Below, in pieces: positions 1 to 60,633 of a DNA stretch of 60,633 nt. Numbering within the stretch: the first letter of the stretch is position 1; each line of letters opens with the position of its first letter. The notes under the pieces are model-generated. The model was not told where the DNA came from, searched no databases, and saw only the letters and a list, made by a program, of their open reading frames with translations. Source of the DNA: Macrostomum lignano (taxonomy: Eukaryota). The stretch covers positions 1 to 60,633 of the forward strand of contig NIVC01002051.1 of assembly GCA_002269645.1 (NCBI GenBank), read 5' to 3'. Position numbers and translations under genes: made by a program.

Positions 1-3000
1 CCGAGGTAGTGAGTTGGCCCGCGTGAAGGCGGGACAGATGCTGACGAAATGCTCAGCGGTTTCGTCACCTGAGTTGCAGAAACTACAGGTGGCGTTGGTG
101 GGTTGCCCTGCAGGTACTGGTGCCTGGAGAAGCAGCCGTGACCAGAGAGGGTCATGGTGGCAGCCCGGATGTCTCTGCGCGAGAGGCGCAAGAGGAGCTT
201 CCGGAGCTGGTGAGAGGGCTGAGGACAGCGCCTCTGGATTGCCTGCAGTTCGTGCGGTTCGCCAAGTCGAGCGGTGCTGAGTCCTGATCCACGCTTTGAT
301 GCGCGAGTCGATGACACAGCCAGGAATCGGGACAAGAGGTTCGGGGCCGAGAGAGGAGCCGGAGGCACCAACTTTTGCAAGGGTGTCAGCCAACTCATTT
401 CCTCGGATCCCCACATGCCCCGGAACCCACTTAAGGGTAATTTTGTTGGCGGAACCCAACACATTGAGGAGTTTGATACAGTCAAGGACTGTAGCAGAGT
501 TGGTGCTGCAGCCACTGATGGCGTGCAAGGCAGCTTGGCTGTCCGAATGGAAAATGATGTTCTTACCAGTAACGCCAGTGGCGAGAAGCTCTGCAGTGCA
601 GGAGCTGATGGCCAGAACTTCATTTTGGAAAACACTGGAGTTGACCCCAGTGTATTGAGCGTGGGTAGCGATGACCCTCCCGTTCAGAAAGATTCCAACA
701 CCAAAGCCGGTGTTGGCTGACTGCTTAGAACCGTCGGTGTAGCAATGAAGCTCACCAGGGTTCCAATGGTCATTGATGTTATCGCGCGAGTCGATAGCTA
801 CGGAGTAGCGCTGTCTCAGGTTGAGCGTTGAGGCAATGCCATCGGTGAAGACGCGATTGGCCTGACACTCGTTGAGAAAGTTGAGGCACAGATCGCTATG
901 CGGGACAAGGTTCCGCTTAGCAGGTGCTCTCATGTAAATGAATTTGACGCCGGCATCAATTAGACGCCGCGTCGTTCTAGCCGCCTCACCCCTGATGAAG
1001 AGGTCAAGAGGCGGAAGATTAAGAAGGCCCCCATGCCAGCAAAGGGCGTGGACCTGGTGGCGTTGCAGATGAGCCTACACGCTCTGCCTTGGATCGTGTT
1101 GAGCAGGTCTGCATGGCTTTTGACCTGGGTAGCGCTAACCCAGACAACAGAGGCGTACGTAATGGCAGGTCTAACTACGGAAGTATAGATCCACCAAAGC
1201 CGCTTTGGGGATAGACCCCAAGAAGTGCCAAGTGCTCGTCGGAGCTGGGCCAGGATGGCTGAGGCACGCTTGGCTTTTGCTTTCACGTGGAAGGACCAGT
1301 TGAGCCGGTGGTCAAGTGTGACCCCGAGACATCTGGTCTGGTGCGCGAAGGCAATATCTCTGCCGTAGAGCTGCAGAGGACGTATGTTCCAGCGTAGTCT
1401 GCTGGTAAACATAATGGCAACGGTTTTGGGCTCAGAGAGTTCCAAACCATTGTCATTGGCCCAGGATTCTGCTTTGCGGATAAAGCTCTGCATCAGATCC
1501 CTGAGCGTGCTGGGAGACGGTCCTGCCACAATGGCCGTGACGTCATCAGCATACCCGACTTTGAAGACGGGGTCGGTCGGGAGTCACTCAAAGAGCGTCC
1601 ATGACCAGGTTCCAGAGCGTCGGGGTGAGGACTCCGCCTTGGGGTCCACCCTTACAGACTCTGGTGGAGGCAGTTTGCCCAAGAAGTTGGGCAGTGACCG
1701 TACGGTTGGAGATCATGTACATGATCCACCGTATGAGGGTAGCATGAGCTTTGCGATTTTGAAGGGCCCTCTGAAACGCTTCAAAGATAACGTTGTCGAA
1801 GGCGCCAACAATGTCAAGAAAGAGAGCCAGGGCGTAACCGTCACCCAGTACCGCCCGTTCAATCTTTCGACAATCGCATGCAGGGCGCTGTCAGTCGACC
1901 TCCCGGTACGGAAGGCGTGCTGATTATTGCTGAGGGGCATCGCTGTCAGCTCGCAGGACAGCAGCCGCCAGAGAATAAGCCTCTCAGTGAGCTTAAGCAT
2001 TGCTGACGTTAAGCTAATGGCCGGAAGGCCTTGACGCTTTGGTAGTCACCCTTCCCAGGTTTGGGAATAAAGACTACCGAGCTTCAGTCCAGCTTTTGGG
2101 AACGTATCCCAGCTGGATAGAGGCCCGCATAAGATTGCGGGTGAGTCTCAGGAACGAGGGTATCTTGGCTGCTTCACGAAGGAGAACAGGGTAGATACCA
2201 TCAGGTCCAGGAGATTTGAAGGGTTTGAAGGTTCTGACCGCACGAGCGATTAGGTCTTCAGTGACAATGCCCGCCGCTAGGGTGGCTCCATCCATCGAAT
2301 GGTTGGGCTCCGGTCTAGCAGTAGGTACCCTCGGGAAGAATGTGCTAAGCATATGCTGAAGCACTTCTTCAGGGTCTTTAGTAAGAGAGCCATCATCTTT
2401 TTTGATCATGGCTAATTTGGACATTTTGTCCATTGTAAGGGCCTTGACAAGCCTAGAAGTAGGTCTGTCTTGATCCAATTCATTGCAGAATTGGCGCCAC
2501 TTACATTCCTTGGCCTTGCGCACTTCAGATTTGAAATTGCGGGAGGCTTGCCGGAAAAGCTCCATGTCCTCCGGGTTTCCGGTCTTCATGGCACGGCGAT
2601 GAAGGCTTTTGGCCTTCCGCCTGAGTTTCCCCAGCTCCGGGTTCCACCACGGCGCCGAGGTCTTGCCTTTGTAGGCGCGAGCAGGACAAGCCGCTTCGTA
2701 GGCTGCAATAATGCAACCTGTCAGCGTCTCAGCCATATGATCCACATCCTCGCAGGTCTCAATCGGACGTAAGTCCGTGAGTTCCTGCAGGTGCAGATCA
2801 AGGGCAGCCTTGTAGGCCGCCCAATCAGTGTTGCGGATATTGCGTCTCCAAGTGATCGGAGACTGGGTTTTAGTGTCCGCGATGTTAAAGGCGATAAAGC
2901 AGTGGTCAGACAGGGAGGGCTCCTCAGACCAGACTCTCCACTCCTCAACTCTGTCAAAGAGTCTTGGGGTAACGAGTGTGGCGTCGAGGACCTCGGTCCA

Positions 3001-3565
3001 TCTGCCATTATTAAAGGTAGGAGTGCTGCCGCGGTTGCAGAGCATGAGGTTTGTGTTAGAGATGAGGGCCAGAAGCTCCTCTCCTCTAGTGTTGGTATCT
3101 TTGCTGCCCCAGTGCTTGTGGTGCGCGTTGAGGTCGCCCCCTAAGCACAGCTCAGCGTTCTGGGACTCGCAGTACTGCGCGAGGCGCAGTAAACTCTCAG
3201 GAGCAGGGTCTCTGTCGCCTGGGATATAAACCGAGGCAACAAGACACGTACGCGGAGAGAAATGATTAGATTGGATGACGCAAAGGTCTCCATCAGAGAG
3301 ATCAGTCCTCAGCCAAGCCTGGAGATGGCTAGCAGCGAGGATAGCCGCTCTAGGCGGCTGTTCCCCGGGCCACACACATAAAAATCAGAGTAGCCAGAGG
3401 AATGTTGGGCAACTTACCGTTGCGCATCCAGGGTTCCTGGATCAGGATGAGGCCTGGCCTGTACAGCTCAGCAATCTTCATCAGATTTACTGACGCAGAT
3501 ACGCAATGCTGTAAATTAATTTGCAGACAGAATGTCGCTCCTTTGGCAGCGTGGAGCTTAGTCAT
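1..3565 (-). CDS. ORF2 polyprotein: apurinic-like endonuclease, reverse transcriptase, RNase H, zinc knuckle (frameshifted as assembled)
   Basis: Manual translation gives LQINLQH..LIQEPW and LGGDLNAHH..WGS..SDH (APE); SPGPDG, LFLDIVGAFDNV, GGPQGGVLTPTLWN, YADD at 1553-1542 and CLGVTLD (RT); YTDGSK at 741-724, FQNEVLAI, SDSQAAL and WVPGHVGIRGNELADTLAK (RNase H); CSFC-x8-H-x4-C at 87-34. Frameshifts occur near 3390, 2077, 2010, 1861, 1590, 1022, ~240 and ~100. Confidence 0.93.
364..750 (-). other. RNase H domain of LINE ORF2
   Basis: One uninterrupted frame: HCYTDGSKQ...SVFQNEVLAI...IIFHSDSQAALHAI...KWVPGHVGIRGNELADTLAKVGA, with all catalytic D/E/D/D positions present. Confidence 0.92.
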
Positions 3566-3603: not shown

Positions 3604-5107
3604 TCAAGGAGACTTGGACAACAGATCGTCCTCGTCCCAGGCCGCTGGGGCTTGACTGGGAGATGGGAGTTGGTCGACGTCCATGGCCTCCTCACCCCCA
3701 CCGGCCCCCCCAGCAGAGTCCTCAGGCTCCGATGACAGGATGGAGGAAGCTTCCTCACCTGCATCTTTACCTTCAGACCCCACCAGGGTGGCCGAGGAGA
3801 GCTCGGATTCCGAAGACCCGGCCTCGTCCTCAACTCCTTCTCCGACTGGCAGGTTTGGTTCCCGGGGCTTGGCCGGAGCCGTTACCGCGGTCGCCGAACT
3901 GCTGCTAGCAGAGGGGCGAGATGCAGCTTTGGCTTTGGGATCGGCTTGCGCCTTTCCTTGGGCCTTAGACTGCGCCCCGCTCTTGCCGGAGATGCCGGGT
4001 TGGCAGTAGCCTTCCCTTTGGCAGACTTTCCTCGGCGCATCTTGAGCTTGAGGGCACCCAGCTGGAAAGAGGATCCATTAGGGTACCGACTCGCCCAAGT
4101 GCTGGAAAGGCCGAGGACAATTGAGTTGCCCGTCTCCCCCCTGCGGACTTTACGGTGATACACCAGTCCACTAGCAGGGAGGTCGGGGTTCAGACGCAGT
4201 AGGACCCGGCGAATAACGTCTGGTCCAGCTGCGGTGCTCTTAGCAGGGACGAAAACCACATAGGGTATCGTCTTTGGACGCTGGCCCTCGCGAAGAAAAA
4301 GAGCTCCGCCAAGGTCAGCATCCAAGGAGACCGTCGGTAGCCGCTGGAGCAGCTGCCGAGCGTCCTCCTCGCTGCTAGGAGCAATAAGAACGAATGTGCT
4401 TCGCAGCACCATCCGCTCAATGCCGATGGAGATTCCCTCCTCGACAGTCAGCTCAATCAGATAGGAGTCAACAGCACTCCACACTTTTTGAAGCTGATCA
4501 GTGGTCCAGTCCTGGTCGCGACCTTGGATGATCACTCCCGGGATTTTGGCCTTGGCCTTCGCCGCAAAGGTAGCTCCCGAAGGAACCTCCTTGTTGGCAG
4601 TGGCCATTTGTTGCGCCGTGGTTTCGGCCTCAGCAGCCGCAGCAGCATCTCCAGGGAGCGCCGCCGCTGAACTACTGGAGCTTCCACCGGCCGGCCCGCC
4701 TGGTTGCCTTGGGACTCCAGTCGCTTCAGCATCCATGGTGGACGCCGCCGCTTTGGCCCCCGCAGCTCCCTTCTTGGCCTGCCTTTTGGCGCGTTGTTTA
4801 GCGCGTTTGCGCTCAAGCCGAGCCCGCTGAGCTTCATCGGATCTGCCAGATTTGGCCGGTCCTTTAGGCTCAGAGCTCGCGGTTCCCTTAGATCCACCAG
4901 CGGAGCTGGCAGGTCTTGGGTATTTTGAGTTTGGTAGCTCTGGTCGGATCTGCCAGCAGAGCCAGCCGGTCCTTCCTTTGCCACAGTTGAATCAGTCGGT
5001 TGGGATCTGCCAGCAGGGCCGGCCGGTCCTTCGGACTGAGGTTGGGGTTTAGAAGGGTCCCCGTCCCTAGAAATAGCTTGTTTATCCATAGTCGGCTCGA
5101 AGGCCAT
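3604..5107 (-). CDS. ORF1 (gag-like nucleic-acid chaperone) of the LINE, with frameshifts
   Basis: Overlapping ORF-track pieces 4532-5164 and 3882-4736, plus an acidic C-terminal frame ending WDEDDLLSKSP* (TGA at 3606-3604), 39 nt upstream of the ORF2 ATG (3565). Position and low-complexity composition are typical of LINE ORF1. The start codon choice (ATG 5107) is uncertain. Confidence 0.7.
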
Positions 5108-8551: not shown

Positions 8552-9762
8552 GTGGGCGTGGCCACTGCATATGTCATGTGCGAAAAATATTTTTTTTGGC
8601 TATCTTGGGTGGGCTTAAGCCTATACTTCTATACATTTAGGCCCTATATTGTATAACTTTATCATGTTTAGGCACTCTTTAAAAACACTGTAGCTAAATT
8701 TTTTATAACTATAAACATTTTTTATATAGGCTACTATTACTAACCTATCCTGTTTTTGGATCTATTCTATGTCATTTCTAGGTTTTACTTTAAGGACTTA
8801 GCCTTCTATGGAATAGGCCTTTATCTAGCTAAGGAACAAAATAGAAAACATATGCTAGAATAAAAAACAACTGATCAAAATTATAAGCTCTTATAAATAT
8901 GGCTAGTGATGACAAACCTAATATTATAGTATTTAAAATATATTATATACCAAATATAATGTTTTGGCAAATTTATGCTATTTTTAAATTGCCAACCTAA
9001 TTATAGTAATTTATTTTCTGAAATCTATCGCATACCCACAGACAACTCATTTTTAGTATATAGGATAGGCCCCCTATTGAAAAAAATTGGCATAGGCATA
9101 GGCCTATCCTAGATGATGTTGATGACACATGGCTAGCCTCATATGTTATAGCACCATCTTGTTTTTGTTAATAAAAAAGCAATTTGGCTAGGCTACTTCA
9201 ATCAATATATCCAATGATTTTATAATATAAGTATTGGTCAATTTGGTTGGCCTAATAACATTTTGTATTAATAAAAAAGCTTCAAGATATGGCATTTAAA
9301 ATTAAAGTCATTAATAAGTCTTTAGTTAAGCCTATAATATAATTTAATATATAATACTGGGTACTTATAGAGCTATATACTGTATATAATAAGCATAAAT
9401 CAATGAATGTATTTATGTATTTATTCATTTTGTTTTTTAAAAACAATTTTTATATATAATGTAGTCAATTTTATAAACTTAATGTACTTATAAACTGAAA
9501 AAATAGGTGAGTCAATATTCTCAAATGATAACATCAATAATAGGCTTCAAGCAGTTGCCTAGTGTTTCAAGTGCCTTTTTAATAGTAAAAATATAACTAG
9601 ATAGCGAATAAACTTTAAATGGCATAAATAGAGCTTCTTTATATAGAGCAGTTGTACTAATAAGTCCTTGTAAGTCCTGAGACAACACTTGGACTTGCTC
9701 TGGGTCTTGGTAAGACTATAAGAAGGTGTAAATTATATATTTGTTTTGCTATTGTTTAACAG
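8552..9762 (+). promoter_or_regulatory. Putative promoter and AT-rich 5' intron/outron of the LOTUS gene, ending in a 3' splice acceptor
   Basis: GC-box-like GGGCGTGGC near 8555; very AT-rich tract 8600-9760; pyrimidine tract ttgttttgctattgtttaacAG with AG at 9761-9762, 77 nt upstream of the ATG. Confidence 0.4.
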
Positions 9763-9839
9763 ATTTTGGTGAAAAGTAAAGCATATCATATTGACTAGCA
9801 GGTTCAATCTAATGCCAAACAACACTCCAGCCCGCCGCC

Positions 9840-10487
9840 ATGACATCCAACCCTCTTCTTCGCGCTGTGCTACTCTCTGCTAAGAATGGCGTCCGCCTGT
9901 CCGAGCTTCAGTCGCAGTACCGAGCTTTGGCTGGACACGAGCTGGACCTTCGCGGCCAGAGTCTGCAAAAGTTTATTCAGGATTGTGATGAAGCCTATCT
10001 GAGACTGGTCAATGGAGAGCTGGTTGCTTTCGGCCGGGAGACTGAACAGACTCAGCATATTTGCTCGCTAATTCGGCGACAGAAAACCACAGGCGGAGGC
10101 GGCGGCCGGGGCCACGGTGGGCGCAGGCAGCAGCAGCAGCAGCAGGACCAGCAGCAACAGAAGCGCTATTCAGCTGGTCAAAACCGTCGCTTCAATCGCG
10201 AACGCGAAGAGAATTTTCAACAAGATAATCATCACCGGGCCACTGGGATGCAGCTGCCGCATCGCCGCTACCAGCATCAGCGCCAACAGCAGGCTTTCGA
10301 CTATCGCCGAACTACAGTTCTGTCCATTGTTGATGAGAATACCACTAATGGCGCTGACCGACTGGTGCGACTCGACCACGCCAGCGGCGGTGGCGCCAGC
10401 CTGCGAGTGACCATCTCAAATAACAAAAACTCAGTTGGTCGCAGAGCTGCGTTTCGGCGATGGCCTCTTGCGGAGTGCGATCTGTGA
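9840..10487 (+). CDS. LOTUS (OST-HTH) domain-only protein with a TDRD7/TDRD5-type extended LOTUS and a Q/R/G-rich disordered tail, 215 aa
   Basis: N-terminal LRAVLLSAKNGVRLSELQSQYRALAG closely resembles the first LOTUS of TDRD7 as I recall it (LRAVLQSHKNGV...YRSLTG). It is followed by the eLOTUS C-terminal helix motif ETEQTQHICSLIRRQK. GCCGCCATG start context, intact ORF, AATAAA at 10592. Confidence 0.85.
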   Translation: MTSNPLLRAVLLSAKNGVRLSELQSQYRALAGHELDLRGQSLQKFIQDCDEAYLRLVNGELVAFGRETEQTQHICSLIRRQKTTGGGGGRGHGGRRQQQQQQDQQQQKRYSAGQNRRFNREREENFQQDNHHRATGMQLPHRRYQHQRQQQAFDYRRTTVLSIVDENTTNGADRLVRLDHASGGGASLRVTISNNKNSVGRRAAFRRWPLAECDL

Positions 10488-10591
10488 CTGTGCCCTATGT
10501 GACCCTTGATGTTGACGTGGGGATGCCCGCATGTCTCTGGATTCATTGTCTGTTTCACTATTTTTACCACTAGCTATCATCTCGCTTTTCA

Positions 10592-10597
10592 AATAAA
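10592..10597 (+). terminator. Polyadenylation signal of the LOTUS gene
   Basis: AATAAA 105 nt after the stop codon, followed by T-rich sequence. Confidence 0.55.
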
Positions 10598-10797
10598 TTT
10601 ATACCCAATAGAAGGTTAATACTCGTACGCTTTTAGTTAGCGACTTTTTAAGTTTTTATAGATTTCCTGAATTAACCACTTTCAAGTCGATACTTTAATT
10701 TGAGTTGAAAACTATACAGACAGTAAGTGGGGTGCAGGGCCCAAACGGTAATATTTAAGCCAAAAAACTGGGGGGGGGGCTTGAGTGCAAGATAAGA

Positions 10798-11090
10798 CAG
10801 GCGTGAAGTGCGCGACTGAGGAAAGAGGCGAAAATGGAGAGCCAATCAGAAGGCAGCGAGGGGGGAGAGAATAACAAGATTGAACTAGACAGAGAGGCGT
10901 GAAGTGCGCGACTTGGAAAGAGGCGAAAATGGAGAGCCAATCAGAAGGCAGCGAGGGGGGAGAGAATAACAAGATTGAACTAGACAGAGAGGCGTGAAGT
11001 GCGCGACTTAGGAAAGAGGGGAAAATGGAGAGCCAATCAGAAAGCAGCGAGGGAGAGAGAATAACAAGATTGAACTAGACAGAGGGAGAG
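10798..11090. repeat. 95-96 bp tandem repeat, about 3 copies
   Basis: GCGTGAAGTGCGCGACT recurs at 10801, 10897 and 10992; each unit contains AGCCAATCAG. Confidence 0.9.
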
Positions 11091-12375
11091 AAAACAGTGA
11101 CTAGTGCAGATGAACTAAAAAAGTCGCGACAAATTTCGCCTTTAAGCGCTTTTTATTTTGCATTTTTACTTCTCCATTCAGTGCCAGACTTTCCATATTT
11201 TAATCTTGCCTACTGAATTTTTTACTGGCATGCATCAATGATATTTGATAATTTGGTCAAAACAATAGCAATACATTTATTCAAATCGCTTTGTGTCGCT
11301 GTATCCGACTTGAATGTTGAGTTTGGTTCAATGATTTACTTTGCTTTTATTGTGTTTTATTGTGTTTTTTGTCTTTTTAATCAACACTGCAATCCATCAC
11401 ACAACTTTGACCAAATTAGTGACCCGAACTGACCCCAAGTCAACCAAGGGAGTTGACCCGAACTGACCCCTGGTCAACCAAAAGATTTAATAATCGAAAG
11501 CCATTGATATGCAGTACTTCTGCTGATTTTTTTCGTATTGCTACGAGGCCAAGGACAACTAAAGCAACGTATATACAGGACGCGACACTCACGTTTCATG
11601 CAAAATGTTTTGAAGGCCACAAGAAAAATACACTACGGAGATAGGAAGTTTTCATTTTTTCAGAACGAAAACATTTGTTCTGAAAATTAGGATTCTATGT
11701 TAATTTTTTTCTACGTACATTTCCTGTACCTAAAAATAAAAAAATGCATGGCACTGCTCGAATTTTTGGTTCTATGAATCTATTTTATCATCTCTGTTAC
11801 ACATATTGTTACACAGTCAGCTAAGAATAACAAAATTGATTCATAAAACCAATGAGCTGAGCCGTGCCATTTTAATGATTTTTAGGCACAGGAGACATGC
11901 AAATGAACGTAGAATAAGAATTGAGCATTCAATCCTAATTTTTGAACAAATTCTTTATATTATATGAACATGTGCTGCTTCCAGTTTCCAGTAGTAAACA
12001 AAGAATAAAATAAAATATGACAATAAATCATAAATACTTACACATAGCTCGTACAACATTCCAAGCATGGCAAATGGGCATTTTATATTGCGTCGGCATA
12101 ATGTGAAAGTACTCAAGTACATTAAAACACATGTACTCGTACCAGTGGTCCTTGGCCAAGATTATAGAAGTTTATTGCTAAGAGGAACTGAAAAGCACGA
12201 TCCTGTTTATCTGGCTAATTGCCATATCATTTGATGAGGTGCCATTTCATTTTGCTTCTGAGGTCTCGGTCGGTGATTAAGAACCTGATTATTGCAACGT
12301 ACGCCGAACCCAATATTTTCTACGATTACCAGCTGTAATTATTATAGCTTATATTCTACACATTCTTAGTAAGTA

Positions 12376-12787
12376 CTATACGGTATGAGATGACTTTCTG
12401 TTTTGCTTGAGGTAGGCACAGACTGGGCCTCCGTGTCCGGACCCGGCCTGCAGCTCGTCGGTCTCCTCGCTCACTAGCAGGCACTGCTCACATTGTTGCT
12501 TAAGAGTTTTCGTTGCCCAAAGCAGCTCCCGGCCGCTGATGAAGCCCTCAGAGTCGCGCACAGTCTCCGGCAGCGGCTTGCTTTTGGTCTCGGGCAACAG
12601 CAGGGCGGTGAAGGCGCTGACAATGCTGAGCCCGCCAAATATGAGGCCGGGCAGGAATTGATTGTCGGCGCCAGGATGTTGGCCAGCCCGGTGCCCAGGA
12701 ACAGGCCGTTGTTGCGAATGGAAGTGGGGAACACCTCGGCGGACCAGACTTCCATGATGCAGTAGCCGGCGGTGAGGAGGCACTTGA
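12376..12787 (-). CDS. SLC22-family (MFS organic cation/anion transporter) terminal exon
   Basis: Acceptor ...cgcatccgcAG at 12789-12788. Reads KCLLTAGYCIMEVWSAEVFPTSIRN.G and LPGLIFGGLSIVSAFTALLLPETKSKPLPETV (SAE.FPT..R and LPETK..LP motifs). Frame break near 12660. Confidence 0.85.
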
Positions 12788-12865
12788 CTGCGGATGCGAG
12801 GGGTGGCAACACAAGGAAAGAAAATTTGCCTTGGGGCTCGCACAGTGATCTTGCCGATGAGGTCC

Positions 12866-12976
12866 CCAACATCCAGGCACAGAGTGCGTACTTGTACATG
12901 TCCGATGATTCTAAGAATTAGTCGGGGCCCCTGTACACCCTGAATGAGTGCGTGTGTGCGTTCAGCAGACTGGGCC
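12866..12976 (+). mobile_element. Diverged SINE-body remnant inside the SLC22 intron
   Basis: Aligns by eye to 57370-57470 (ccaac.tcc.aggcacag, gtacatg, ctgtacac.cctg..tgagtg). Confidence 0.45.
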
Positions 12977-13131
12977 AAAGCTGCTTGCCCCTCCTCGCTG
13001 TACAAGCTATGCTGGGTCGACTAGCCTGGCAGCGCCCACAGCCCCCTGCAAACTGCTAGAACTGCTAGATTTCTGATGCGTTTTTGCTCTCTTACCTGGT
13101 ATCTGTCACAGCTAGAGCTTTGCCAACTCAC

Positions 13132-13713: not shown

Positions 13714-14499
13714 TTGGCGCCCCTGTCTCTCGGTTGGCGCTCCTGTCTCTCGGTGGGCGCATCTGTCTCTCGGTGGGCGCATCTGTCTCTCGGTGGGCGC
13801 CCCTGTCTCTCGGTGGGCGCCCCTGTCTCTCGGTGGGGGCTCCTGTCTCTCGGTTGGCGCTCCTGTCTCTCGGTTGGCGCTCCTGTCTCTCGGTTGGCGC
13901 ATCTGTCTCTCGGTGGGCGCCCCTGTCTCTCGGTTGGCGCTCCTGTCTCCCGGTGGGCGCATCTGTCTCTCGGTTGGCGCTCCTGTCTCCCGGTGGGCGC
14001 ATCTGTCTCTCGGTTGGCGCTCCTGTCTCCCGGTGGGCGCATCTGTCTCTCGGTTGGCGCTCCTGTCTCTCGGTGGGCAGTCTGTCTCTCGGTTGGCGCT
14101 CCTGTCTCTCGGTTGGCGCCCCTGTCTCTCGGTGGGTGCCCCTGTCTCTCGGTGGGCGCCCCTGTCTCTCGGTGGGCGCATCTGTCTCTCGGTGGGCGCC
14201 CCTGTCTCTCGGTTGGCGCTCCTGTCTCTCGGTTGGCGCTCCTGTCTCTCGGTTGGCGCCCCTGTCTCTCGGTTGGCGCTCCTGTCTCTCGGTGGGCGCC
14301 CCTGTCTCTCGGTTGGCGCTCCTGTCTCTCGGTGGGCGCCCCTGTCTCTCGGTTGGCGCTCCTGTCTCTCGGTGGGCGCCCCTGTCTCTCGGTGGGCGCC
14401 CCTGTCTCCCGGTGGGCGCATCTGTCTCTCGGTGGGCGCATCTGTCTCTCGGTTGGCGTCCCTGTCTCTCGGTGGGCGCCCCTGTCTCTCAGTGGGCGC
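13714..14499. repeat. 20-bp GC-rich minisatellite (TGGGCGCCCCTGTCTCTCGG and variants), about 39 copies
   Basis: Directly visible period-20 array; it produces the six-frame repetitive ORFs in the track. Confidence 0.97.
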
Positions 14500-15597: not shown

Positions 15598-16140
15598 TGT
15601 TCAAAGAATGTTCAAATTGTGAGCAAAGTATGGAGATTGCGATTACATTGATCGGGTTTGTGCCTTCACTTAGAATACCTTGAGCAAATGGCCCGCACCA
15701 CTGTGAGAAAGCTGAACATTCAGATTTGGTTTCTGGTTCTTAATGTACATAGCTAGGATTTTATGTGCAAAGGTTAGGGTTTAGGCTAGGGTTTAGGCTA
15801 GGGTTTAGGCTAGGGTTTAGGCTAGGGCTTTGGATAGGGTTTAGGTTAGGGTTTTGGATAGGGTTTAGGTTAGGGTTTTGGATGGGGTTTAGGTTAGGGT
15901 TTTGGATAGAGTTTAGGTTGGGGTTTAGTATGAGGTTTAGGTTAGGGTTTCGGATAGAGTTTAGGTTGGGGTTTAGTATGAGGTTTAGGTTAGGGTTTCG
16001 GATAGAGTTTAGGTTAGGGTTTAGTATGGGGTTTAGGTTAGGGTTTTGGATAGAGTTTAGGTTGGGGTTTAGTATGGGGTTTAGGTTAGGGTTTCGGATA
16101 GGGTTTAGGTTAGGGTTAGGCTTTGAACAGACTTTGAACA
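15598..16140. mobile_element. Inverted-repeat-bounded element carrying a telomere-like array
   Basis: TGTTCAAAGAATGTTCAAA (15598-15616) vs reverse complement of 16122-16140, TGTTCAAAGTCTGTTCAAA: 17/19 match. Confidence 0.5.
15772..16120 (+). repeat. Degenerate interstitial TTAGGG-like array with 12- and 24-bp higher-order units
   Basis: TAGGGTTTAGGC units grade into TAGGGTTTTGGATAGAGTTTAGGT-type units. Confidence 0.85.
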
Positions 16141-51870: not shown

Positions 51871-52425
51871 GTCTCCAATTTCCATCTCGCCGGGCCGGGC
51901 GCAGCTGCGCTCGGTGCGACAGTAATGAAGGCTGCCTAATGCAATAAAACCAGCATTTCAGCCGCTCCCTGACAACCCCAGCTCGAGCCCGCTCCCCTCC
52001 CCGCCCCGTCCCCCATCCGTCCGGGCCATTGGGACGGAGGTTCTGTGCTCGACACAGAAAATAATTAGAACTCCAAGATGAGTTGTGCAGAGGCAATAAG
52101 GCCTGGCCAAGAGCGGGCTGCATAGCGAAGGAGTGGGCGCGCATCGAATCTCCGCAAAGGTCGCGCAAAGACAGCAACCAAAAAGGGATGGAAGAAATAA
52201 TTCCTCACATTTTATTTTATCTTTTTTAAGAAAAGAATTTATTCCAAAGAGACGGTCGGGGATGAACTTCAAGTTGGCGACTTTCCGGGTAATCTCACAG
52301 GATTATCTGCGGGTACTTGGTACTTTGAGATTCGTGAAATTGCCAAATTATCAGAACAGAGATTTAGTTAACTGTCTGGATAGTCTTCAATTTTGGTTCG
52401 CTAATTAAAGCCACGTAAAGAGAAC

Positions 52426-53174
52426 TCCCCTTAGTGTCCTTCAGTAGCCCTGCTACCCGAACCCGGAATTCCCCTTAGTGTCCTTCAGTAGCCCTGCTAC
52501 CCGAACCCGAAATTCCCCTTAGTGTCCTTCAGTAGCCCTGCTACCCGAACCCGAAATTCCCCTTAGTGTCCTTCAGTAGCCCTGCTACCCGAACCCGAAA
52601 TTCCCCTTAGTGTCCTTCAGTAGCCCTGCTACCCGAACCCGGAATTCCCCTTTAGTGTCCTTCAGTAGCCCTGCTACCCGAACCCGGAATTCCCCTTAGT
52701 GTCCTTCAGTAGCCCTGCTACCCGAACCCGGAATTCCCCTTAGTGTCCTTCAGTAGCCCTGCTACCCGAACCCGGAATTCCCCTTAGTGTCCTTCAGTAG
52801 CCCTGCTACCCGAACCCGAAATTCCCCTTTAGTGTCCTTCAGTAGCCCTGCTACCCGAACCCGGAATTCCCCTTAGTGTCCTTCAGTAGCCCTGCTACCC
52901 GAACCCGGAATTCCCCTTAGTGTCCTTCAGTAGCCCTGCTACCCGAACCCGGAATTCCCCTTAGTGTCCTTCAGTAGCCCTGCTACCCGAACCCGGAATT
53001 CCCCTTAGTGTCCTTCAGTAGCCCTGCTACCCGAACCCGGAATTCCCCTTAGTGTCCTTCAGTAGCCCTGCTACCCGAACCCGGAATTCCCCTTAGTGTC
53101 CTTCAGTAGCCCTGCTACCCGAACCCGGAATTCCCCTTAGTGTCCTTCAGTAGCCCTGCTACCCGAACCCGGAA
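52426..53174. repeat. 44-bp minisatellite, about 17 near-identical copies
   Basis: TTCCCCTTAGTGTCCTTCAGTAGCCCTGCTACCCGAACCCGGAA. Confidence 0.97.
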
Positions 53175-53466
53175 GTCCCGCTCCCAAAGTCATTTAATGT
53201 TACCTCCAGGACGACTATTTATTTCTGAATATAAAATTTTAAATAACCTCAACAATGCTTAAATAAATACAAGTAATTCCATTTTACATCTGTTGCAATA
53301 TATTTCAAGCAATATTCGAATTTTTAGATAGTTCTAAATCTTTAATCTAAATCTAAATTTTTAGATAGTTCCCGCCTCTCACCGACGGGAGAAAAACGAC
53401 TGTTGCTTAACAATGTTATATTGCATCCATGATATTACAGCATTATAGGGATGTTATATCCCTGCA

Positions 53467-53997
53467 CTGTGAGGCGCCTCTCACCCCCACCCCTCTTCTG
53501 TGAGGCGCCTCTCACCCCCACCCCTCTTCTGTGAGGCGCCTCTCACCCCCACCCCTCTTCTGTGAGGCGCCTCTCACCCCCACCCCTCTTCTGTGAGGCG
53601 CCTCTCACCCCACCCCTCTTCTGTGAGGCGCCTCTCACCCCCACCCCTCTTCTGTGAGGCGCCTCTCACCCCACCCCTCTTCTGTGAGGCGCCTCTCACC
53701 CCCACCCCTCTTCTGTGAGGCGCCTCTCACCCCCACCCCTCTTCTGTGAGGCGCCTCTCACCCCACCCCTCTTCTGTGAGGCGCCTCTCACCCCACCCCT
53801 CTTCTGTGAGGCGCCTCTCACCCCCACCCCTGTTCTGTGAGGCGCCTCTCACCCCCACCTCTGTTCTGTGCGGCGCCTCTCACCCTCACCCCTATTCTGT
53901 GAGGCGCCTCTCACCCCCACCCATATTCTGTGAGGCGCCTCTCACCCCCACCTCTGTTCTGTGCGGCGCCTCTCACCCTCACCCCTGTTCTGTGATG
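53467..53997. repeat. 30-31 bp minisatellite, about 17 copies, degenerating rightward
   Basis: CTGTGAGGCGCCTCTCACCCCCACCCCTCTT. Confidence 0.96.
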
Positions 53998-54487
53998 CGC
54001 TTCTTACTAAAGACTGGGTCAAAAAACAGTTACAGGATAAGAAGAGTTTGCGAGACAATGCAGCACTATAGGGGCGCCTTCCATTTCTAGACTGCCATAA
54101 ACAGACCTGGCTGCTGGGCCCTTGGGGAACGCATTAATAATTTAAGCGGTTGCTCCATTACGGGCAATGATAAGGTGCGCTAAGTTCAGCTTCCTTGATC
54201 CGACGATTCGCTGGATTAGACTTCCGGACAGCAGAAGCATTTCGCTGCAAAATGCATTAGCGAGATAGCAAATATTCCAGCTTGCTATTTCTATCGTTTT
54301 TGAATGCTGCTAAATTGGTTTTTGCCATGGACAAGCTCGGTCCAGAAAAAATACACAAAACTTTGCCCTGTTTTGCTGGCCTGTTTTAGCATTCTTTCAT
54401 CTTTAATTTGAGAAACTCTGAGAATCTCCATTACTTGCTTCAGTGTACGAGGTGATTGCAAGTGATTCGTAAGTCCATAAGATAAGA

Positions 54488-55888: not shown

Positions 55889-56534
55889 ACACAAATCCCA
55901 CACTGAATCTCCCAGCTCCCTTCTACAGGATCCCACACTGAATCTCCCAGCTCCCTTCTACAGGATCCCACACCGAATCTCCCAGTTCCCTTCTACAGGA
56001 TCCCACACCGAATCTCCCAGCTCCCTTCTACAGGATCCCACACTGAATCTCCCAGCTCCCTTCTACAGGATCCCACACTGAATCTCCCAGCTCCCTTCTA
56101 CAGGATCCCACACCGAATCTCCCAGCTCCCTTCTACAGGATCCCACACCGAATCTCCCAGTTCCCTTCTACAGGATCCCACACCGAATCTCCCAGCTCCC
56201 TTCTACAGGATCCCACACCGAATCTCCCAGTTCCCTTCTACAGGATCCCACACCGAATCTCCCAGCTCCCTTCTACAGGATCCCACACCGAATCTCCCAG
56301 CTCCCTTCTACAGGATCCCACACCGAATCTCCCAGTTCCCTTCTACAGGATCCCACACCGAATCTCCCAGCTCCCTTCTACAGGATCCCACACTGAATCT
56401 CCCAGCTCCCTTCTACAGGATCCCACACCGAATCTCCCAGCTCCCTTCTACAGGATCCCACACTGAATCTCCCAGCTCCCTTCTACAGGATCCCACACTG
56501 AATCTCCCAGCTCCCTTCTACAGGATCCCACACT
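55889..56534. repeat. 35-bp minisatellite, about 18 copies, in the GPCR intron
   Basis: ACAGGATCCCACACYGAATCTCCCAGYTCCCTTCT. Confidence 0.97.
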
Positions 56535-58069: not shown

Positions 58070-59042
58070 GGCTGAGACACCTCTGCAATGTGCAGGAGGG
58101 GCTGAGACACCTCGCAATGTGCTGAGACACCTCTGCAAGGGGCTGAGACACCACTGCAATGTGCGGGAGGGCTGAGACACCTCTGCAATGTGCGGGAGGG
58201 GCTGAGACACCTCTGCAATGTGCAGGAGGGGCTGAGACACCTCTGCAATGTGCGGGAGGGGCTGAGACACCTCTGCAATGTGCGGAGGGGCTGAGACACC
58301 TCTGCAATGTGCGGGAGGGGCTGAGACACCTCTGCAATGTGCGGGAGGGGCTGAGACACCTCTGCAATGTGCAGGAGGGGCTGAGACACCTCTGCAATGT
58401 GCGGGAGGGCTGAGACACCACTGCAATGTGCGGGGGGGCTGAGACACCTCTGCAATGTGGCAGGAGGGCTGAGACACCTCTGCAATCTGCGGGAGGGCTG
58501 AGACACCTCTGCAATCTGCGGGAGGGGCTGAGACACCACTGCAATGCTTGGGAAGGGGCTGAGACACCTCTGCAATGTGCGGGAGGGGCTGAGACACCTC
58601 TGCAATGTGCGGGAGGGCTGAGACACCTCTGCAATGTGCGGGAGGGGCTGAGACACCTCTGCAATGTGCAGGAGGGGCTGAGAACATCTGCAATCTGCGG
58701 GAGGGGCTGAGACACCACTGCAATGCTTGGAGGGGCTGAGACACCTCTGCAATGTGCGGGAGGGGCTGAGACACCTCTGCAATGTGCGGGAGGGCTGAGA
58801 CACCACTGCAATGCTTGGGAGGGGCTGAGACACCACTGCAATGCTTGGGAGGGCTGAGACACCTCTGCAATGTGCGGGAGGGGCTGAGACACCTCTGCAA
58901 TGTGCGGGAGGGGCTGAGACACCTCTGCAATGTGCGGGAGGGGCTGAGAACACCTCTGCAATGTGCGGGAGGGGCTGAGACACCTCTGCAATGTGCGGGA
59001 GGGCTGAGACACCTCTGCAATGTGGGAGGGGCTGAGACACCC
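58070..59042. repeat. 30-31 bp minisatellite, about 31 copies
   Basis: GCTGAGACACCTCTGCAATGTGCGGGAGGG(G). Confidence 0.97.
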
Positions 59043-59749: not shown

Positions 59750-60633
59750 TGAAAATGATAGATCAGAGAGAAAAGACAGAGGGTACGAATTAGATCAGGA
59801 GAGGTGACGGGTGAGAAAGACAAGAGAGAAGAAGACAGAGTACGAATAGATCAGGCAGAGGGGGTGACGGGGTGAGAATCAAAGAAGAATACAGAGGGTA
59901 GAATAGATCAGGCAGAGGGGTACGTGGTGAGAATAGATCAAGAGAAGCAGTACGTAATAGATCAGGCAGAGGGGTGACGGTGAGAATAGATCAGAGAGAA
60001 GTAGACAGAGGTACGAATAGATCAGGCAGAGGGGTGACGGGGTGAGAATAGATCAGAGAAAGAAGACAGAGGGTACGAATAGATCAGGCAGAGGGGTGAC
60101 GGTGAGAATAGATCAGAGAGAAGAAGACAGAGGGTACGAATAGATCAGCAGAGGGGTGACAGGGTGAGAATAGATCAGAGAGAAGTAGACAGAGGGTACG
60201 AATAGATCAGGCAGAGGGTTGACGGGTGTGAGAATAGATCAGAGAGAAGTAGACAGAGGGTACGAATAGATCAGGAGAGGGTGACAGGTGAGAATAGATC
60301 AGAGAGAAAGACAGAGTACGAATAGATCAGCAGAGGGTGACGGGTGAGAATAGATCAGAGAGAAAGACAGAGGTACAAATAAGACAGGCAGAGGGTGACA
60401 GGGTGAGAATAATCAGAGAGAAGAAGACAGAGGTACGAATAGATCAGCAGAGGTGACAGGGGTGAGAATAGATCAGAGAGAAAAGACAGAGTACGAATAG
60501 ATCAGCAGAGGGGTGACGGGGTGAGAATAGATCAGAGAGAAGTAGACAGAGGGTACGAATAGATCAGGCAGAGGGGTGACGGGTGAGAATAGATCAGAGA
60601 GAAGAAGACAGGTACGAATAGATCAGCAGAGGG
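59750..60633. repeat. ~60-62 bp purine-rich tandem repeat (two AATAGATCAG sub-units per monomer), continuing past the window end
   Basis: GTACGAATAG at 60011, 60073 and 60134; many small indels. Confidence 0.93.

What the first reader, a model, noticed from the sequence alone, without database searches (positions are those of the whole stretch)
9763..10597. Stand-alone eLOTUS protein: TDRD7-like Vasa-binding module plus condensate-type tail, no Tudor domains
Seen: an intact, single-coding-exon 215-aa ORF with one LOTUS domain (aa ~3-83) including the C-terminal extension T.HI.SLI.RQK. It is followed by poly-G, RGHGGRR, poly-Q and R-rich low-complexity sequence, a stop, and AATAAA 105 nt later; I see no strong splice donor that would continue the protein. 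Established: extended LOTUS domains of Oskar, TDRD5 and TDRD7 bind and stimulate the Vasa DEAD-box helicase in germ granules and piRNA nuage, and in TDRD5/7 they are normally coupled to Tudor domains. Inference: a minimal Vasa activator or granule scaffold, possibly lineage-specific (germline or stem-cell chromatoid bodies). It may have arisen by truncation or retroposition of TDRD7 and could act as a competitor or a short-Oskar-like nucleator.
Basis: partly seen in the sequence, partly recalled or inferred. Interest (0 to 1): 0.78.

Follow-up and report, generated by a model that had tools for sequence, protein, structure and literature searches.

The report
Small flatworm eLOTUS-only germ-granule-type protein
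The window (a Macrostomum lignano contig) carries a real single-exon gene for a 215-residue protein: one Oskar/TDRD5/TDRD7-type extended LOTUS domain followed by a disordered basic tail, with no Tudor domain. It is an uncharacterised small member of a known family of Vasa-helicase partners, and its function is untested.

Summary
ORF 9840..10487 (+) encodes 215 aa, and AATAAA lies 105 nt after the stop. The organism is the flatworm Macrostomum lignano. GenBank already lists this ORF and a 97%-identical second copy as unnamed hypothetical proteins.

The N-terminal 83 residues are an extended LOTUS (eLOTUS) domain:
- Pfam is sub-threshold (20.3 vs 23.8 bits).
- An exhaustive phmmer search returns 18 LOTUS proteins or fragments plus the second copy (best E 2e-9); one further hit is a low-complexity match to the tail.
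- AlphaFold gives pLDDT ~90. The best Foldseek match is the Oskar eLOTUS from its complex with Vasa.
- The alpha5 extension and the known Vasa-contact positions are conserved (A9, I74, K82).

Residues 86-215 are predicted disordered (G/R/Q-rich, pI ~11) and have no homologues. No Tudor or OSK sequence occurs anywhere in the contig.

- The 5' end is most likely a spliced-leader acceptor at 9830/9831, not 9762.
- "TDRD7-like" is not resolved against TDRD5 or Oskar.
- Nothing supports retroposition.
- The short basic stretch that eLOTUS needs to stimulate Vasa is depleted.

Vasa binding is inferred, not shown. Verdict: a new member of a known kind, of moderate interest.

The parts
9825..9830 (+). 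Probable spliced-leader trans-splice acceptor, CTCCAG
   Evidence: It is the only match to the M. lignano SL-acceptor motif [T/C]TNCAG in 9601-9845. The deposited 5'-partial CDS of this contig (P0032, PAAMTS...) begins at the next base, 9831. Gene models in that annotation are cut at mapped SL sites. This is inferred; I saw no reads.
9831..9839 (+). Nine-nt leader (CCC GCC GCC), in frame with the ORF
   Evidence: The 35-nt SL ends in ATG. Joined at 9831 it reads ATG CCC GCC GCC ATG..., so an SL-donated AUG would give MPAAMTS... in frame. Use of that AUG is untested.
9840..10487 (+). Coding sequence, 215 aa plus stop, one exon
   Evidence: The ORF was listed. A 97%-identical protein, PAA55180.1 (Mlig017850g3), is encoded in locus L001 as one continuous stretch ending at the same stop. 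No GTRAG donor lies inside it.
9852..10088 (+). eLOTUS domain (aa 5-83), a winged helix
   Evidence: AlphaFold2 gives pLDDT 88-92 over aa 11-80, with H5-13, H20-31, H42-48, E52-57, E60-65 and H72-80. The 26 best Foldseek matches in the PDB are all LOTUS domains, led by 5nt7_A, the Oskar eLOTUS bound to Vasa (80 columns, rmsd 1.7). Phmmer hits are LOTUS proteins. There are zero differences from the second copy over 84 codons.
10053..10085 (+). C-terminal extension helix alpha5 (aa 72-82, QHICSLIRRQK), which defines eLOTUS
   Evidence: A helix is predicted at aa 72-80. H73, I74 and Q81 are invariant in 20 aligned relatives. I74 is equivalent to Oskar L228 and the TDRD5/7 Ile. K82 is equivalent to Tejas K93 and Oskar K236.
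10089..10295 (+). Disordered G/R/H then Q/R-rich segment (aa 84-152)
   Evidence: pLDDT is below 50. For aa 85-152 the pI is 11.7, with 19 Q, 12 R, 10 G and GRAVY -2.43. There are 0 K/R in the 7 residues after K82 and 3 in the next 14. The second copy has an in-frame CAG indel and most of the substitutions here.
10296..10484 (+). C-terminal 63 residues (aa 153-215), an orphan sequence with no recognised domain
   Evidence: No Pfam hit at E<=10. No homologue other than the second copy appears in the exhaustive search. pLDDT is below 50, but only two sequences cover it.
10488..10597 (+). 3' UTR up to the polyadenylation signal AATAAA (10592-10597)
   Evidence: It is the only AATAAA/ATTAAA in 10488-11200. 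The cleavage site itself was not seen.

Best explanation
This is a genuine single-exon gene of Macrostomum lignano whose models in the RNA-seq-based annotation imply transcription. Its mRNA is most likely capped by spliced-leader trans-splicing at 9830/9831 and polyadenylated shortly after 10597.

It encodes a ~25-kDa, very basic protein made of one extended LOTUS domain (aa ~5-83) followed by ~130 residues predicted to be disordered.

[quoted passage not shown] It would do so through its first core helix (A9) and the alpha5 extension (I74, K82), as in Oskar, Tejas/TDRD5, Tapas/TDRD7 and C. elegans EGGD-1/MIP-1. The G/R/Q-rich tail would contribute RNA contacts and multivalent, condensate-prone interactions. 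The protein would then recruit or tune Vasa in germ-cell or neoblast RNP granules.

Shown here: the ORF, its conservation in a second copy, the LOTUS homology, the predicted fold with alpha5, conservation of the contact positions, and the absence of Tudor and OSK. Inferred: expression pattern, trans-splicing, Vasa binding, stimulation and granule localisation.
For: Identity and copies
- The ORF and its signals are present.
- The organism is identified, and both copies carry deposited CDS models. They come from an RNA-seq-based annotation that cuts genes at SL and poly(A) sites.
- One CDS starts at the base after the single YTNCAG motif and the other 3 nt further on.

LOTUS homology
- PDB phmmer finds TDRD7 at E 1.7e-3, TDRD5 over aa 7-83, and Oskar.
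- The exhaustive phmmer search gives 20 hits. Eighteen are LOTUS proteins or fragments (best 2.1e-9), one is the second copy, and one (P0004) is a low-complexity match to the tail. The LOTUS hits include TDRD7A, LOTUS+Tudor proteins and a LOTUS+OSK protein.

Fold
- AlphaFold2 pLDDT is ~90 for aa 11-80, with a C-terminal helix at 72-80.
- The top Foldseek hit is 5nt7_A, the Oskar eLOTUS-Vasa complex (E 8.9e-5, TM 0.75 on the target). The next 25 are all LOTUS domains.

Contact residues
- Oskar A162 (small residue) aligns with A9. Oskar L228 and the TDRD Ile align with I74. The conserved K/R aligns with K82.

Constraint
- There are 0 differences in the 84 LOTUS codons between copies whose flanks differ by 2.8-3.0% (about 7 expected). 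All 8 substitutions and the one in-frame indel lie in the tail.

Precedent for the mechanism
- eLOTUS binds and stimulates Vasa (PMC5458760; preprint 10.64898/2026.03.28.715021; PMC12803171).
Against: - No expression, localisation or interaction data for this gene were found. Five supplement searches held no entry for Mlig017850, and one stored table was truncated.
- Pfam OST-HTH is below the gathering score and covers only aa 7-38. The alpha2-alpha3 loop and the 'IPDV' region are atypical.
- The basic stretch directly after the conserved K/R is required for Vasa stimulation in Tejas. Here it is TTGGGGG, with 0 K/R in 7 residues against a median of 3 in relatives.
- No orthologue outside M. 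lignano was detected.
- The tail gives pN/pS ~0.47 from only 6 non-synonymous and 4 synonymous changes, so it shows no clear constraint.
- The identical tract runs from 9758 to 10120 and so includes ~80 nt of non-coding sequence. Gene conversion could explain it instead of selection.
- The gene sits in a repeat- and transposon-rich contig.
Confidence: 0.55

Rival explanations
1. It binds Vasa but activates it poorly. The protein docks on Vasa through an intact eLOTUS interface. Because the stimulation-specific basic stretch after alpha5 is depleted, it acts as a competitor or buffer against the longer M. lignano eLOTUS protein (Mlig011525/Mlig016662) rather than as an activator.
For: Deleting or mutating the basic stretch of Tejas keeps binding but abolishes ATPase and unwinding stimulation. 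The window protein has 0 K/R in the 7 residues after K82. The M. lignano paralogue P0029 has 5 there (RSKKKKRP) and relatives have a median of 3. The contact residues A9, I74 and K82 are kept.
Against: Three Arg and one His follow within 14 residues (RGHGGRR), and the whole tail is strongly basic (pI 11.7), so RNA contact may simply be displaced. Some LOTUS+Tudor relatives (P0011, P0008) are similarly poor in adjacent K/R. The requirement was shown only for Drosophila Tejas, in a preprint.
Confidence: 0.15
2. It is a LOTUS protein with a different partner. The domain binds RNA (G-rich or G-quadruplex) or another protein, and the protein is a general basic RNA-binding or RNP component unrelated to Vasa.
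For: LOTUS domains were reported as G-rich/G4 RNA binders (PMC7498356). The protein is very basic with an RG/Q-rich tail. The domain is divergent, with a sub-threshold Pfam score and an altered alpha2-alpha3 loop.
Against: The alpha5 extension and the two interface positions that separate Vasa-binding eLOTUS from mLOTUS are present. The best structural match is the Vasa-bound Oskar eLOTUS, including alpha5. Oskar and Tejas eLOTUS alone did not bind RNA.
Confidence: 0.15
3. It is a transcribed but functionless young gene or decaying duplicate: a lineage-restricted fragment of an eLOTUS gene fused to random low-complexity sequence, kept intact in both copies only because the copies are recent.
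For: No orthologue was found outside M. lignano, and the tail has no homologues. Tail substitutions are mostly non-synonymous (6 vs 4), with an indel in the Q run. The surroundings are rich in repeats and transposons, and the 261 bp immediately upstream differ completely between the copies. The assembly is known to be redundant after a recent genome duplication.
Against: The ORF is intact in both copies despite ~3% flank divergence, and the only indel is in frame. The LOTUS part has no change where about 7 are expected. The domain keeps a confident fold and the family-invariant H73, I74 and Q81 despite only 24-37% identity to any relative (40% locally to P0029), which implies long-term constraint. 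CDS GC is twice that of the flanks.
Confidence: 0.15

Closest known systems
eLOTUS domains of TDRD5/Tejas and TDRD7/Tapas (PDB 3s93, 3rco, 2lh9, 8wxs)
   Same: They share the N-terminal winged-helix LOTUS with the alpha5 extension motif HI..L..Q[KR]. The small residue at the Oskar-A162 position and the Ile at the L228 position are the same. The domain sits at the extreme N-terminus, as in these proteins.
   Different: There is no Tudor domain in the protein or the contig. The protein is 215 aa rather than roughly 500-1100. The alpha2-alpha3 loop is shorter, the IPY..LGY and IPDV motifs are replaced, and the adjacent basic stretch is depleted.
Short Oskar (eLOTUS + OSK), PDB 5nt7
   Same: It is the best structural match, aligned over 80 columns including alpha5. 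It combines an eLOTUS with a non-Tudor remainder. A LOTUS+OSK protein (P0014) is among the sequence hits.
   Different: There is no OSK/SGNH-like domain. No evidence bears on LOTUS dimerisation. Oskar is restricted to insects (my own knowledge).
C. elegans MIP-1/EGGD-1 and MIP-2/EGGD-2
   Same: They are Tudor-less proteins built from eLOTUS plus disordered regions that bind and recruit the Vasa homologue GLH-1 (PMC8331183; PMC12803171). This is the closest architecture and the model for how the window protein may work.
   Different: The MIPs have two LOTUS domains and long disordered regions. The window protein has one LOTUS and is much smaller. No sequence relationship beyond the LOTUS fold was tested.
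M. lignano eLOTUS paralogue Mlig011525g2 / Mlig016662g2 (PAA75115.1, PAA82620.1)
   Same: It is from the same species and has an N-terminal eLOTUS that is 40% identical. It shares a shortened loop with the motif [DE]LDL[QR]G, is followed by an RG-rich disordered region, and has no Pfam Tudor.
   Different: It is 652 aa, with a further C-terminal region of unknown fold and a strongly basic stretch after alpha5. The tails are unrelated. The tree does not pair the two domains.

Membership tests
LOTUS / OST-HTH domain (Pfam PF12872) | Score at or above the Pfam gathering threshold | tested here: not met
   The score is 20.3 bits against a cut-off of 23.8, E 5.2e-4, over aa 7-38 only.
LOTUS / OST-HTH domain (Pfam PF12872) | Significant sequence homology to established LOTUS domains over the whole domain | tested here: met
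   The exhaustive phmmer search gives 18 LOTUS proteins or fragments aligned over about aa 4-98, best E 2.1e-9. Of those scanned with Pfam, most pass on their own and P0014 (LOTUS+OSK) scores 22.1 bits, just under the cut-off. PDB hits are TDRD7, TDRD5 and Oskar.
LOTUS / OST-HTH domain (Pfam PF12872) | Winged helix-turn-helix fold (three-helix bundle plus beta hairpin) | tested here: met
   The AlphaFold2 model has pLDDT ~90. The Foldseek top 26 are all LOTUS structures, with rmsd 1.4-2.8 and TM on the target 0.58-0.77. This is a prediction, not a solved structure.
Extended LOTUS (eLOTUS) subclass | C-terminal extension forming helix alpha5 | tested here: met
   A helix is predicted at aa 72-80. 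The match to Vasa-bound Oskar eLOTUS (5nt7_A) extends to 80 columns, against 62-69 for the other LOTUS entries in the list, several of which lack alpha5. H73, I74 and Q81 are invariant across relatives. The definition is from PMC5458760.
Extended LOTUS (eLOTUS) subclass | Vasa-contact residues: a small residue at Oskar A162, Leu/Ile at Oskar L228, and K/R at Oskar K236 / Tejas K93 | tested here: met
   A9 (LRAVL), I74 (HICSL) and K82 (RRQK) occupy these positions by alignment.
Extended LOTUS (eLOTUS) subclass | Basic disordered stretch after alpha5, needed for stimulation | tested here: inconclusive
   There are 0 K/R in the 7 residues after K82 and 3 in 14. Relatives have 0-5 in 7, median 3.
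Extended LOTUS (eLOTUS) subclass | Direct binding to, and ATPase stimulation of, Vasa/DDX4 | not testable with these tools
   This needs pull-down and ATPase assays, or a complex prediction, which was not available here.
TDRD5 / TDRD7 (Tejas / Tapas) | One or more (extended) Tudor domains C-terminal to the LOTUS domain | tested here: not met
   There is no Pfam Tudor at E<=10. The tail is predicted disordered. Tblastn and a Tudor HMM against all six frames of the contig find nothing (best E 2.4). The deposited CDS ends at the same stop.
Oskar | C-terminal OSK (SGNH-hydrolase-like) domain | tested here: not met
   There is no OSK or GDSL hit in the protein or in its last 67 residues at E<=10.
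MIP-1/EGGD-1-type LOTUS hub proteins | Two LOTUS domains separated and flanked by long disordered regions | tested here: not met
   There is a single LOTUS domain. The LOTUS profile hits only 9855-10073 in the contig. The disordered tail is present.
MARF1 / limkain-b1 | NYN and/or RRM domains plus tandem minimal LOTUS domains | tested here: not met
   No such Pfam hits were found. The single LOTUS carries alpha5.

The most novel reading that the evidence does not exclude
A minimal protein of one eLOTUS plus a disordered tail, about 25 kDa, is a Macrostomum-lineage-specific regulator of Vasa in neoblast or germ-cell chromatoid-body-type granules. It could be a self-sufficient nucleator, functionally like Short Oskar or EGGD-1 but far smaller. 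Or, because its stimulation stretch is depleted, it could be a natural binding-competent, activation-poor antagonist of the longer eLOTUS protein.
Probability: 0.25. Interest if true: 0.6.

Novelty: new member of a known kind. Interest (0 to 1): 0.4.

Why it matters
eLOTUS domains are the known cofactors that localise and switch on the germline helicase Vasa. In the well-studied cases they come attached to Tudor, OSK or a second LOTUS domain.

A naturally minimal protein of one eLOTUS plus a disordered tail sits here in a transgenesis-capable regenerative flatworm. It would be a compact system for asking what an eLOTUS needs beyond Vasa docking to build or regulate RNP granules. Its altered post-alpha5 stretch is also a natural test of the recently proposed separation between binding and stimulation.

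If it proves non-functional, it is an ordinary lineage-specific duplicate. The practical gain is then an annotation: these hypothetical proteins carry a LOTUS domain that Pfam misses.

Tried and rejected
- Word-indexed protein searches found only the second copy or five short unnamed LOTUS fragments. They gave no inventory of M. lignano LOTUS proteins.
- Searches for Mlig017850, Mlig016662 and Mlig011525 in full texts and in the supplements of five M. lignano papers found nothing. One stored table was truncated, so absence is not informative.
- A neighbour-joining bootstrap on about 90 LOTUS columns left the position unresolved (best sister 21%), so I do not call the domain TDRD7-like. A first attempt timed out.
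- Retroposition test: intronlessness is not diagnostic, because the paralogue's LOTUS and disordered region also lie in a single 1.7-kb exon. I saw no poly(A) run after the AATAAA in the sequence read, and no repeats convincingly flank the gene.
- I considered a transposon-captured gene. There are no convincing terminal repeats around 9.4-11.3 kb; only a 21-nt, 86% inverted pair in AT-rich DNA.
- Downstream Tudor exons: none in six frames of the whole contig.
- The paralogue's C-terminal region has no PDB sequence hit and no Pfam Tudor.
- Minus-strand ORFs at 12376-13005 looked transporter-like by eye but gave no Pfam hit, so I make no claim about a convergent gene.
- dN/dS between the copies rests on too few changes (10) to separate constraint from neutrality in the tail.

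Full report
**1. Observation**

The ORF is real. It runs from ATG at 9840 to TGA at 10485-10487 on the + strand and encodes 215 aa.
- the N-terminal LLRAVLLSAKNGVRLSELQSQYRAL... sequence;
- TQHICSLIRRQK at aa 71-82;
- TTGGGGGRGHGGRR, then a Q run and an R-rich tail.

Further checks on the exon:
- The only AATAAA/ATTAAA in 10488-11200 is at 10592-10597, 105 nt after the stop.
- No M. lignano-type donor (GT[G/A]AG) occurs in 9831-10700.
- The coding part has GC 0.57, against 0.28 upstream and about 0.35 downstream.

**2. Source and annotation status**

The nearest protein is PAA55180.1, 'hypothetical protein BOX15_Mlig017850g3, partial', from Macrostomum lignano. It is 97% identical.

Its locus (L001, NIVC01002792.1) is colinear with the window at 96-97% nucleotide identity, apart from a 32.6-kb satellite block present only in the window.

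The same 90% cluster holds a second NCBI protein that sits on a contig of exactly 60,633 bases, which is this window. That protein reads PAAMTSNP... and is 218 aa. Both copies are therefore already deposited as unnamed, 5'-partial hypothetical proteins.

The Mlig_3_7 annotation derives from RNA-seq. It cuts gene models at mapped spliced-leader and poly(A) sites and calls ORFs with TransDecoder.

**3. 5' end**

A transcript containing them would have produced a complete CDS, not a 5'-partial one.

The window's deposited CDS starts at 9831. That is the base after CTCCAG (9825-9830), the only match in 9601-9845 to the published SL-acceptor motif [T/C]TNCAG. The other copy's CDS starts 3 nt later.

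The 35-nt SL ends in ATG. Joined at 9831, that ATG is in frame, giving MPAAMTS....

I conclude that SL trans-splicing at 9830/9831 is the likely 5' end. This is an inference from the annotation and the motif. I saw no reads.

**4. The domain**

Sequence evidence:
- Pfam OST-HTH is sub-threshold: 20.3 against 23.8 bits, covering aa 7-38 only.
- PDB phmmer finds TDRD7 (E 1.7e-3), TDRD5 (aligned over aa 7-83) and Oskar.
- The exhaustive phmmer search over 1.84 billion representatives returns 20 proteins at E<=1e-3. One is the second copy and one (P0004) is a low-complexity match to the tail. The other 18 align over about aa 4-98, typically with the N-terminus of the hit.
- The named or scanned hits are LOTUS proteins: spider multi-LOTUS proteins, fish TDRD7A, LOTUS+Tudor proteins, a LOTUS+OSK protein, and a M. 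lignano paralogue family, Mlig016662g2/Mlig011525g2.

Structure prediction:
- AlphaFold2 with these relatives gives pLDDT 88-92 for aa 11-80. The secondary structure is H5-13, H20-31, H42-48, E52-57, E60-65 and H72-80.
- Foldseek against the PDB puts 5nt7_A first. That entry is the Oskar eLOTUS bound to the Vasa C-terminal domain (80 columns, rmsd 1.7 Å, TM 0.75 on the target). TDRD7, more Oskar and TDRD5 entries follow, and the first 26 matches are all LOTUS domains.

**5. eLOTUS criteria**

Jeske et al. define eLOTUS by the C-terminal extension that forms alpha5. They show that Oskar A162 (Ala or Ser in the family) and L228 (Leu or Ile) are needed for Vasa binding. In the alignments these positions are A9 and I74.

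H73, I74 and Q81 are invariant among 20 relatives.

The conserved K/R at the end of alpha5 (Tejas K93, Oskar K236) is K82.

A 2026 preprint reports that the next few basic residues are dispensable for binding but required for stimulation. Here those seven residues are TTGGGGG, with 0 K/R. Relatives have 0-5, median 3, and the M. lignano paralogue has 5. Three Arg follow within 14 residues. Binding is therefore plausible, while stimulation is uncertain.

**6. The rest of the protein**

- Residues 86-215 have pLDDT below 50, although only two sequences inform that region.
- Residues 85-152 have pI 11.7, with 19 Q, 12 R and 10 G.
- The last 63 residues have no Pfam hit.
- Nothing in the exhaustive search matches the tail except one low-complexity hit.
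- The paralogue P0029 resembles the protein only in the LOTUS domain.

**7. No Tudor**

- There is no Tudor or OSK hit in the protein.
- Tblastn with LOTUS+Tudor relatives hits only 9855-10073.
- A Tudor HMM against 1,694 stop-free six-frame pieces of the contig gives nothing better than E 2.4, whereas a LOTUS profile finds only this ORF.
- The protein therefore fails the TDRD5/7 and Oskar membership tests, although its domain belongs to their eLOTUS class.

**8. Constraint**

- Between the two copies the 84 LOTUS codons show no difference. The flanks differ by 56/1861 and 50/1800 sites (2.8-3.0%), so about 7 differences are expected there.
- All 8 substitutions and one in-frame CAG indel lie in the tail. 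There pN is 0.020 and pS 0.043, from 10 inferred codon changes.
- The identical tract also covers about 80 nt of non-coding sequence, so gene conversion is an alternative to selection.
- Longer-term constraint is implied by the retained fold and invariant residues at only 24-37% identity to any relative (40% locally to P0029).

**9. Origin**

- The domain is about equidistant from all eLOTUS relatives, and the tree is unresolved, with a best sister at 21% bootstrap.
- The domain shares with the M. lignano paralogue a shortened alpha2-alpha3 loop bearing [DE]LDL[QR]G. This hints at a duplication within the lineage but is not conclusive.
- The paralogue's gene has its LOTUS and disordered region in one 1.7-kb exon, so a single-exon CDS is not evidence of retroposition.
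- I saw no poly(A) run after the AATAAA in the sequence read, and no repeats convincingly flank the gene.

**10. Comparison and verdict**

The closest architecture and working model is C. elegans MIP-1/EGGD-1. It is a Tudor-less eLOTUS plus disordered-region protein that recruits and activates the Vasa homologue. The window protein differs in having one LOTUS domain and being much smaller.

The finding is a correct reading of a real gene. It adds a small, divergent, currently unannotated member to a known class. Function, expression and Vasa binding remain to be tested.

Noticed in passing
window 960-3375 (- strand): A non-LTR retrotransposon. The ORF at 2074-3375 has an endonuclease/reverse-transcriptase-type EEP domain (Pfam Exo_endo_phos_2, E 2.7e-21). 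By eye, RT-like ORF fragments lie at 960-2000, and an ORF at 3882-4736 with no Pfam hit lies further along the + strand.
   Followed up: partly
window 17927-50540: A 32.6-kb block that is absent from the otherwise colinear second copy (L001). It holds two ~11-12-kb arrays of a 238-bp satellite (19.0-29.9 kb and 36.6-48.8 kb), near-duplicates offset by 17,631 bp. Long (ACAG)n arrays lie at 31.6-35.6 kb and 50.5-51.9 kb. In L001 the flanking (AGAC)n joins directly.
   Followed up: partly
window 9449-9709 vs L001 9739-9879: The 261 bp immediately upstream of the gene's outron are not homologous to the 141 bp at the same place in the second copy. Everything further out aligns at ~97%. This may be an insertion or replacement in the putative promoter region.
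   Followed up: no
window 10795-11084: Three 95-bp tandem units lie about 200 nt 3' of the poly(A) signal. Each contains GAGCCAATCAGAAGG, which looks like a CCAAT box. The second copy also carries the repeat.
   Followed up: no
window 13716-14499: A 20-bp unit repeated 39 times produces ORFs of 250-317 aa in several frames on both strands. These are repeat artefacts, not genes. Similar arrays lie at 15771-16117, 52422-53179, 53467-54004, 55895-56533, 58138-59041 and 59758-60633.
   Followed up: no
L002 3001-6167 (NIVC01000903.1), proteins P0029/P0012: A second M. lignano eLOTUS protein (652 aa) has an RGG-rich disordered region and a ~200-aa C-terminal region with no Pfam or PDB sequence match. 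No Tudor was detected, so M. lignano may have more than one Tudor-less eLOTUS protein. Its gene has two exons and lies downstream of a proteasome Rpn3/PSMD3 gene.
   Followed up: partly
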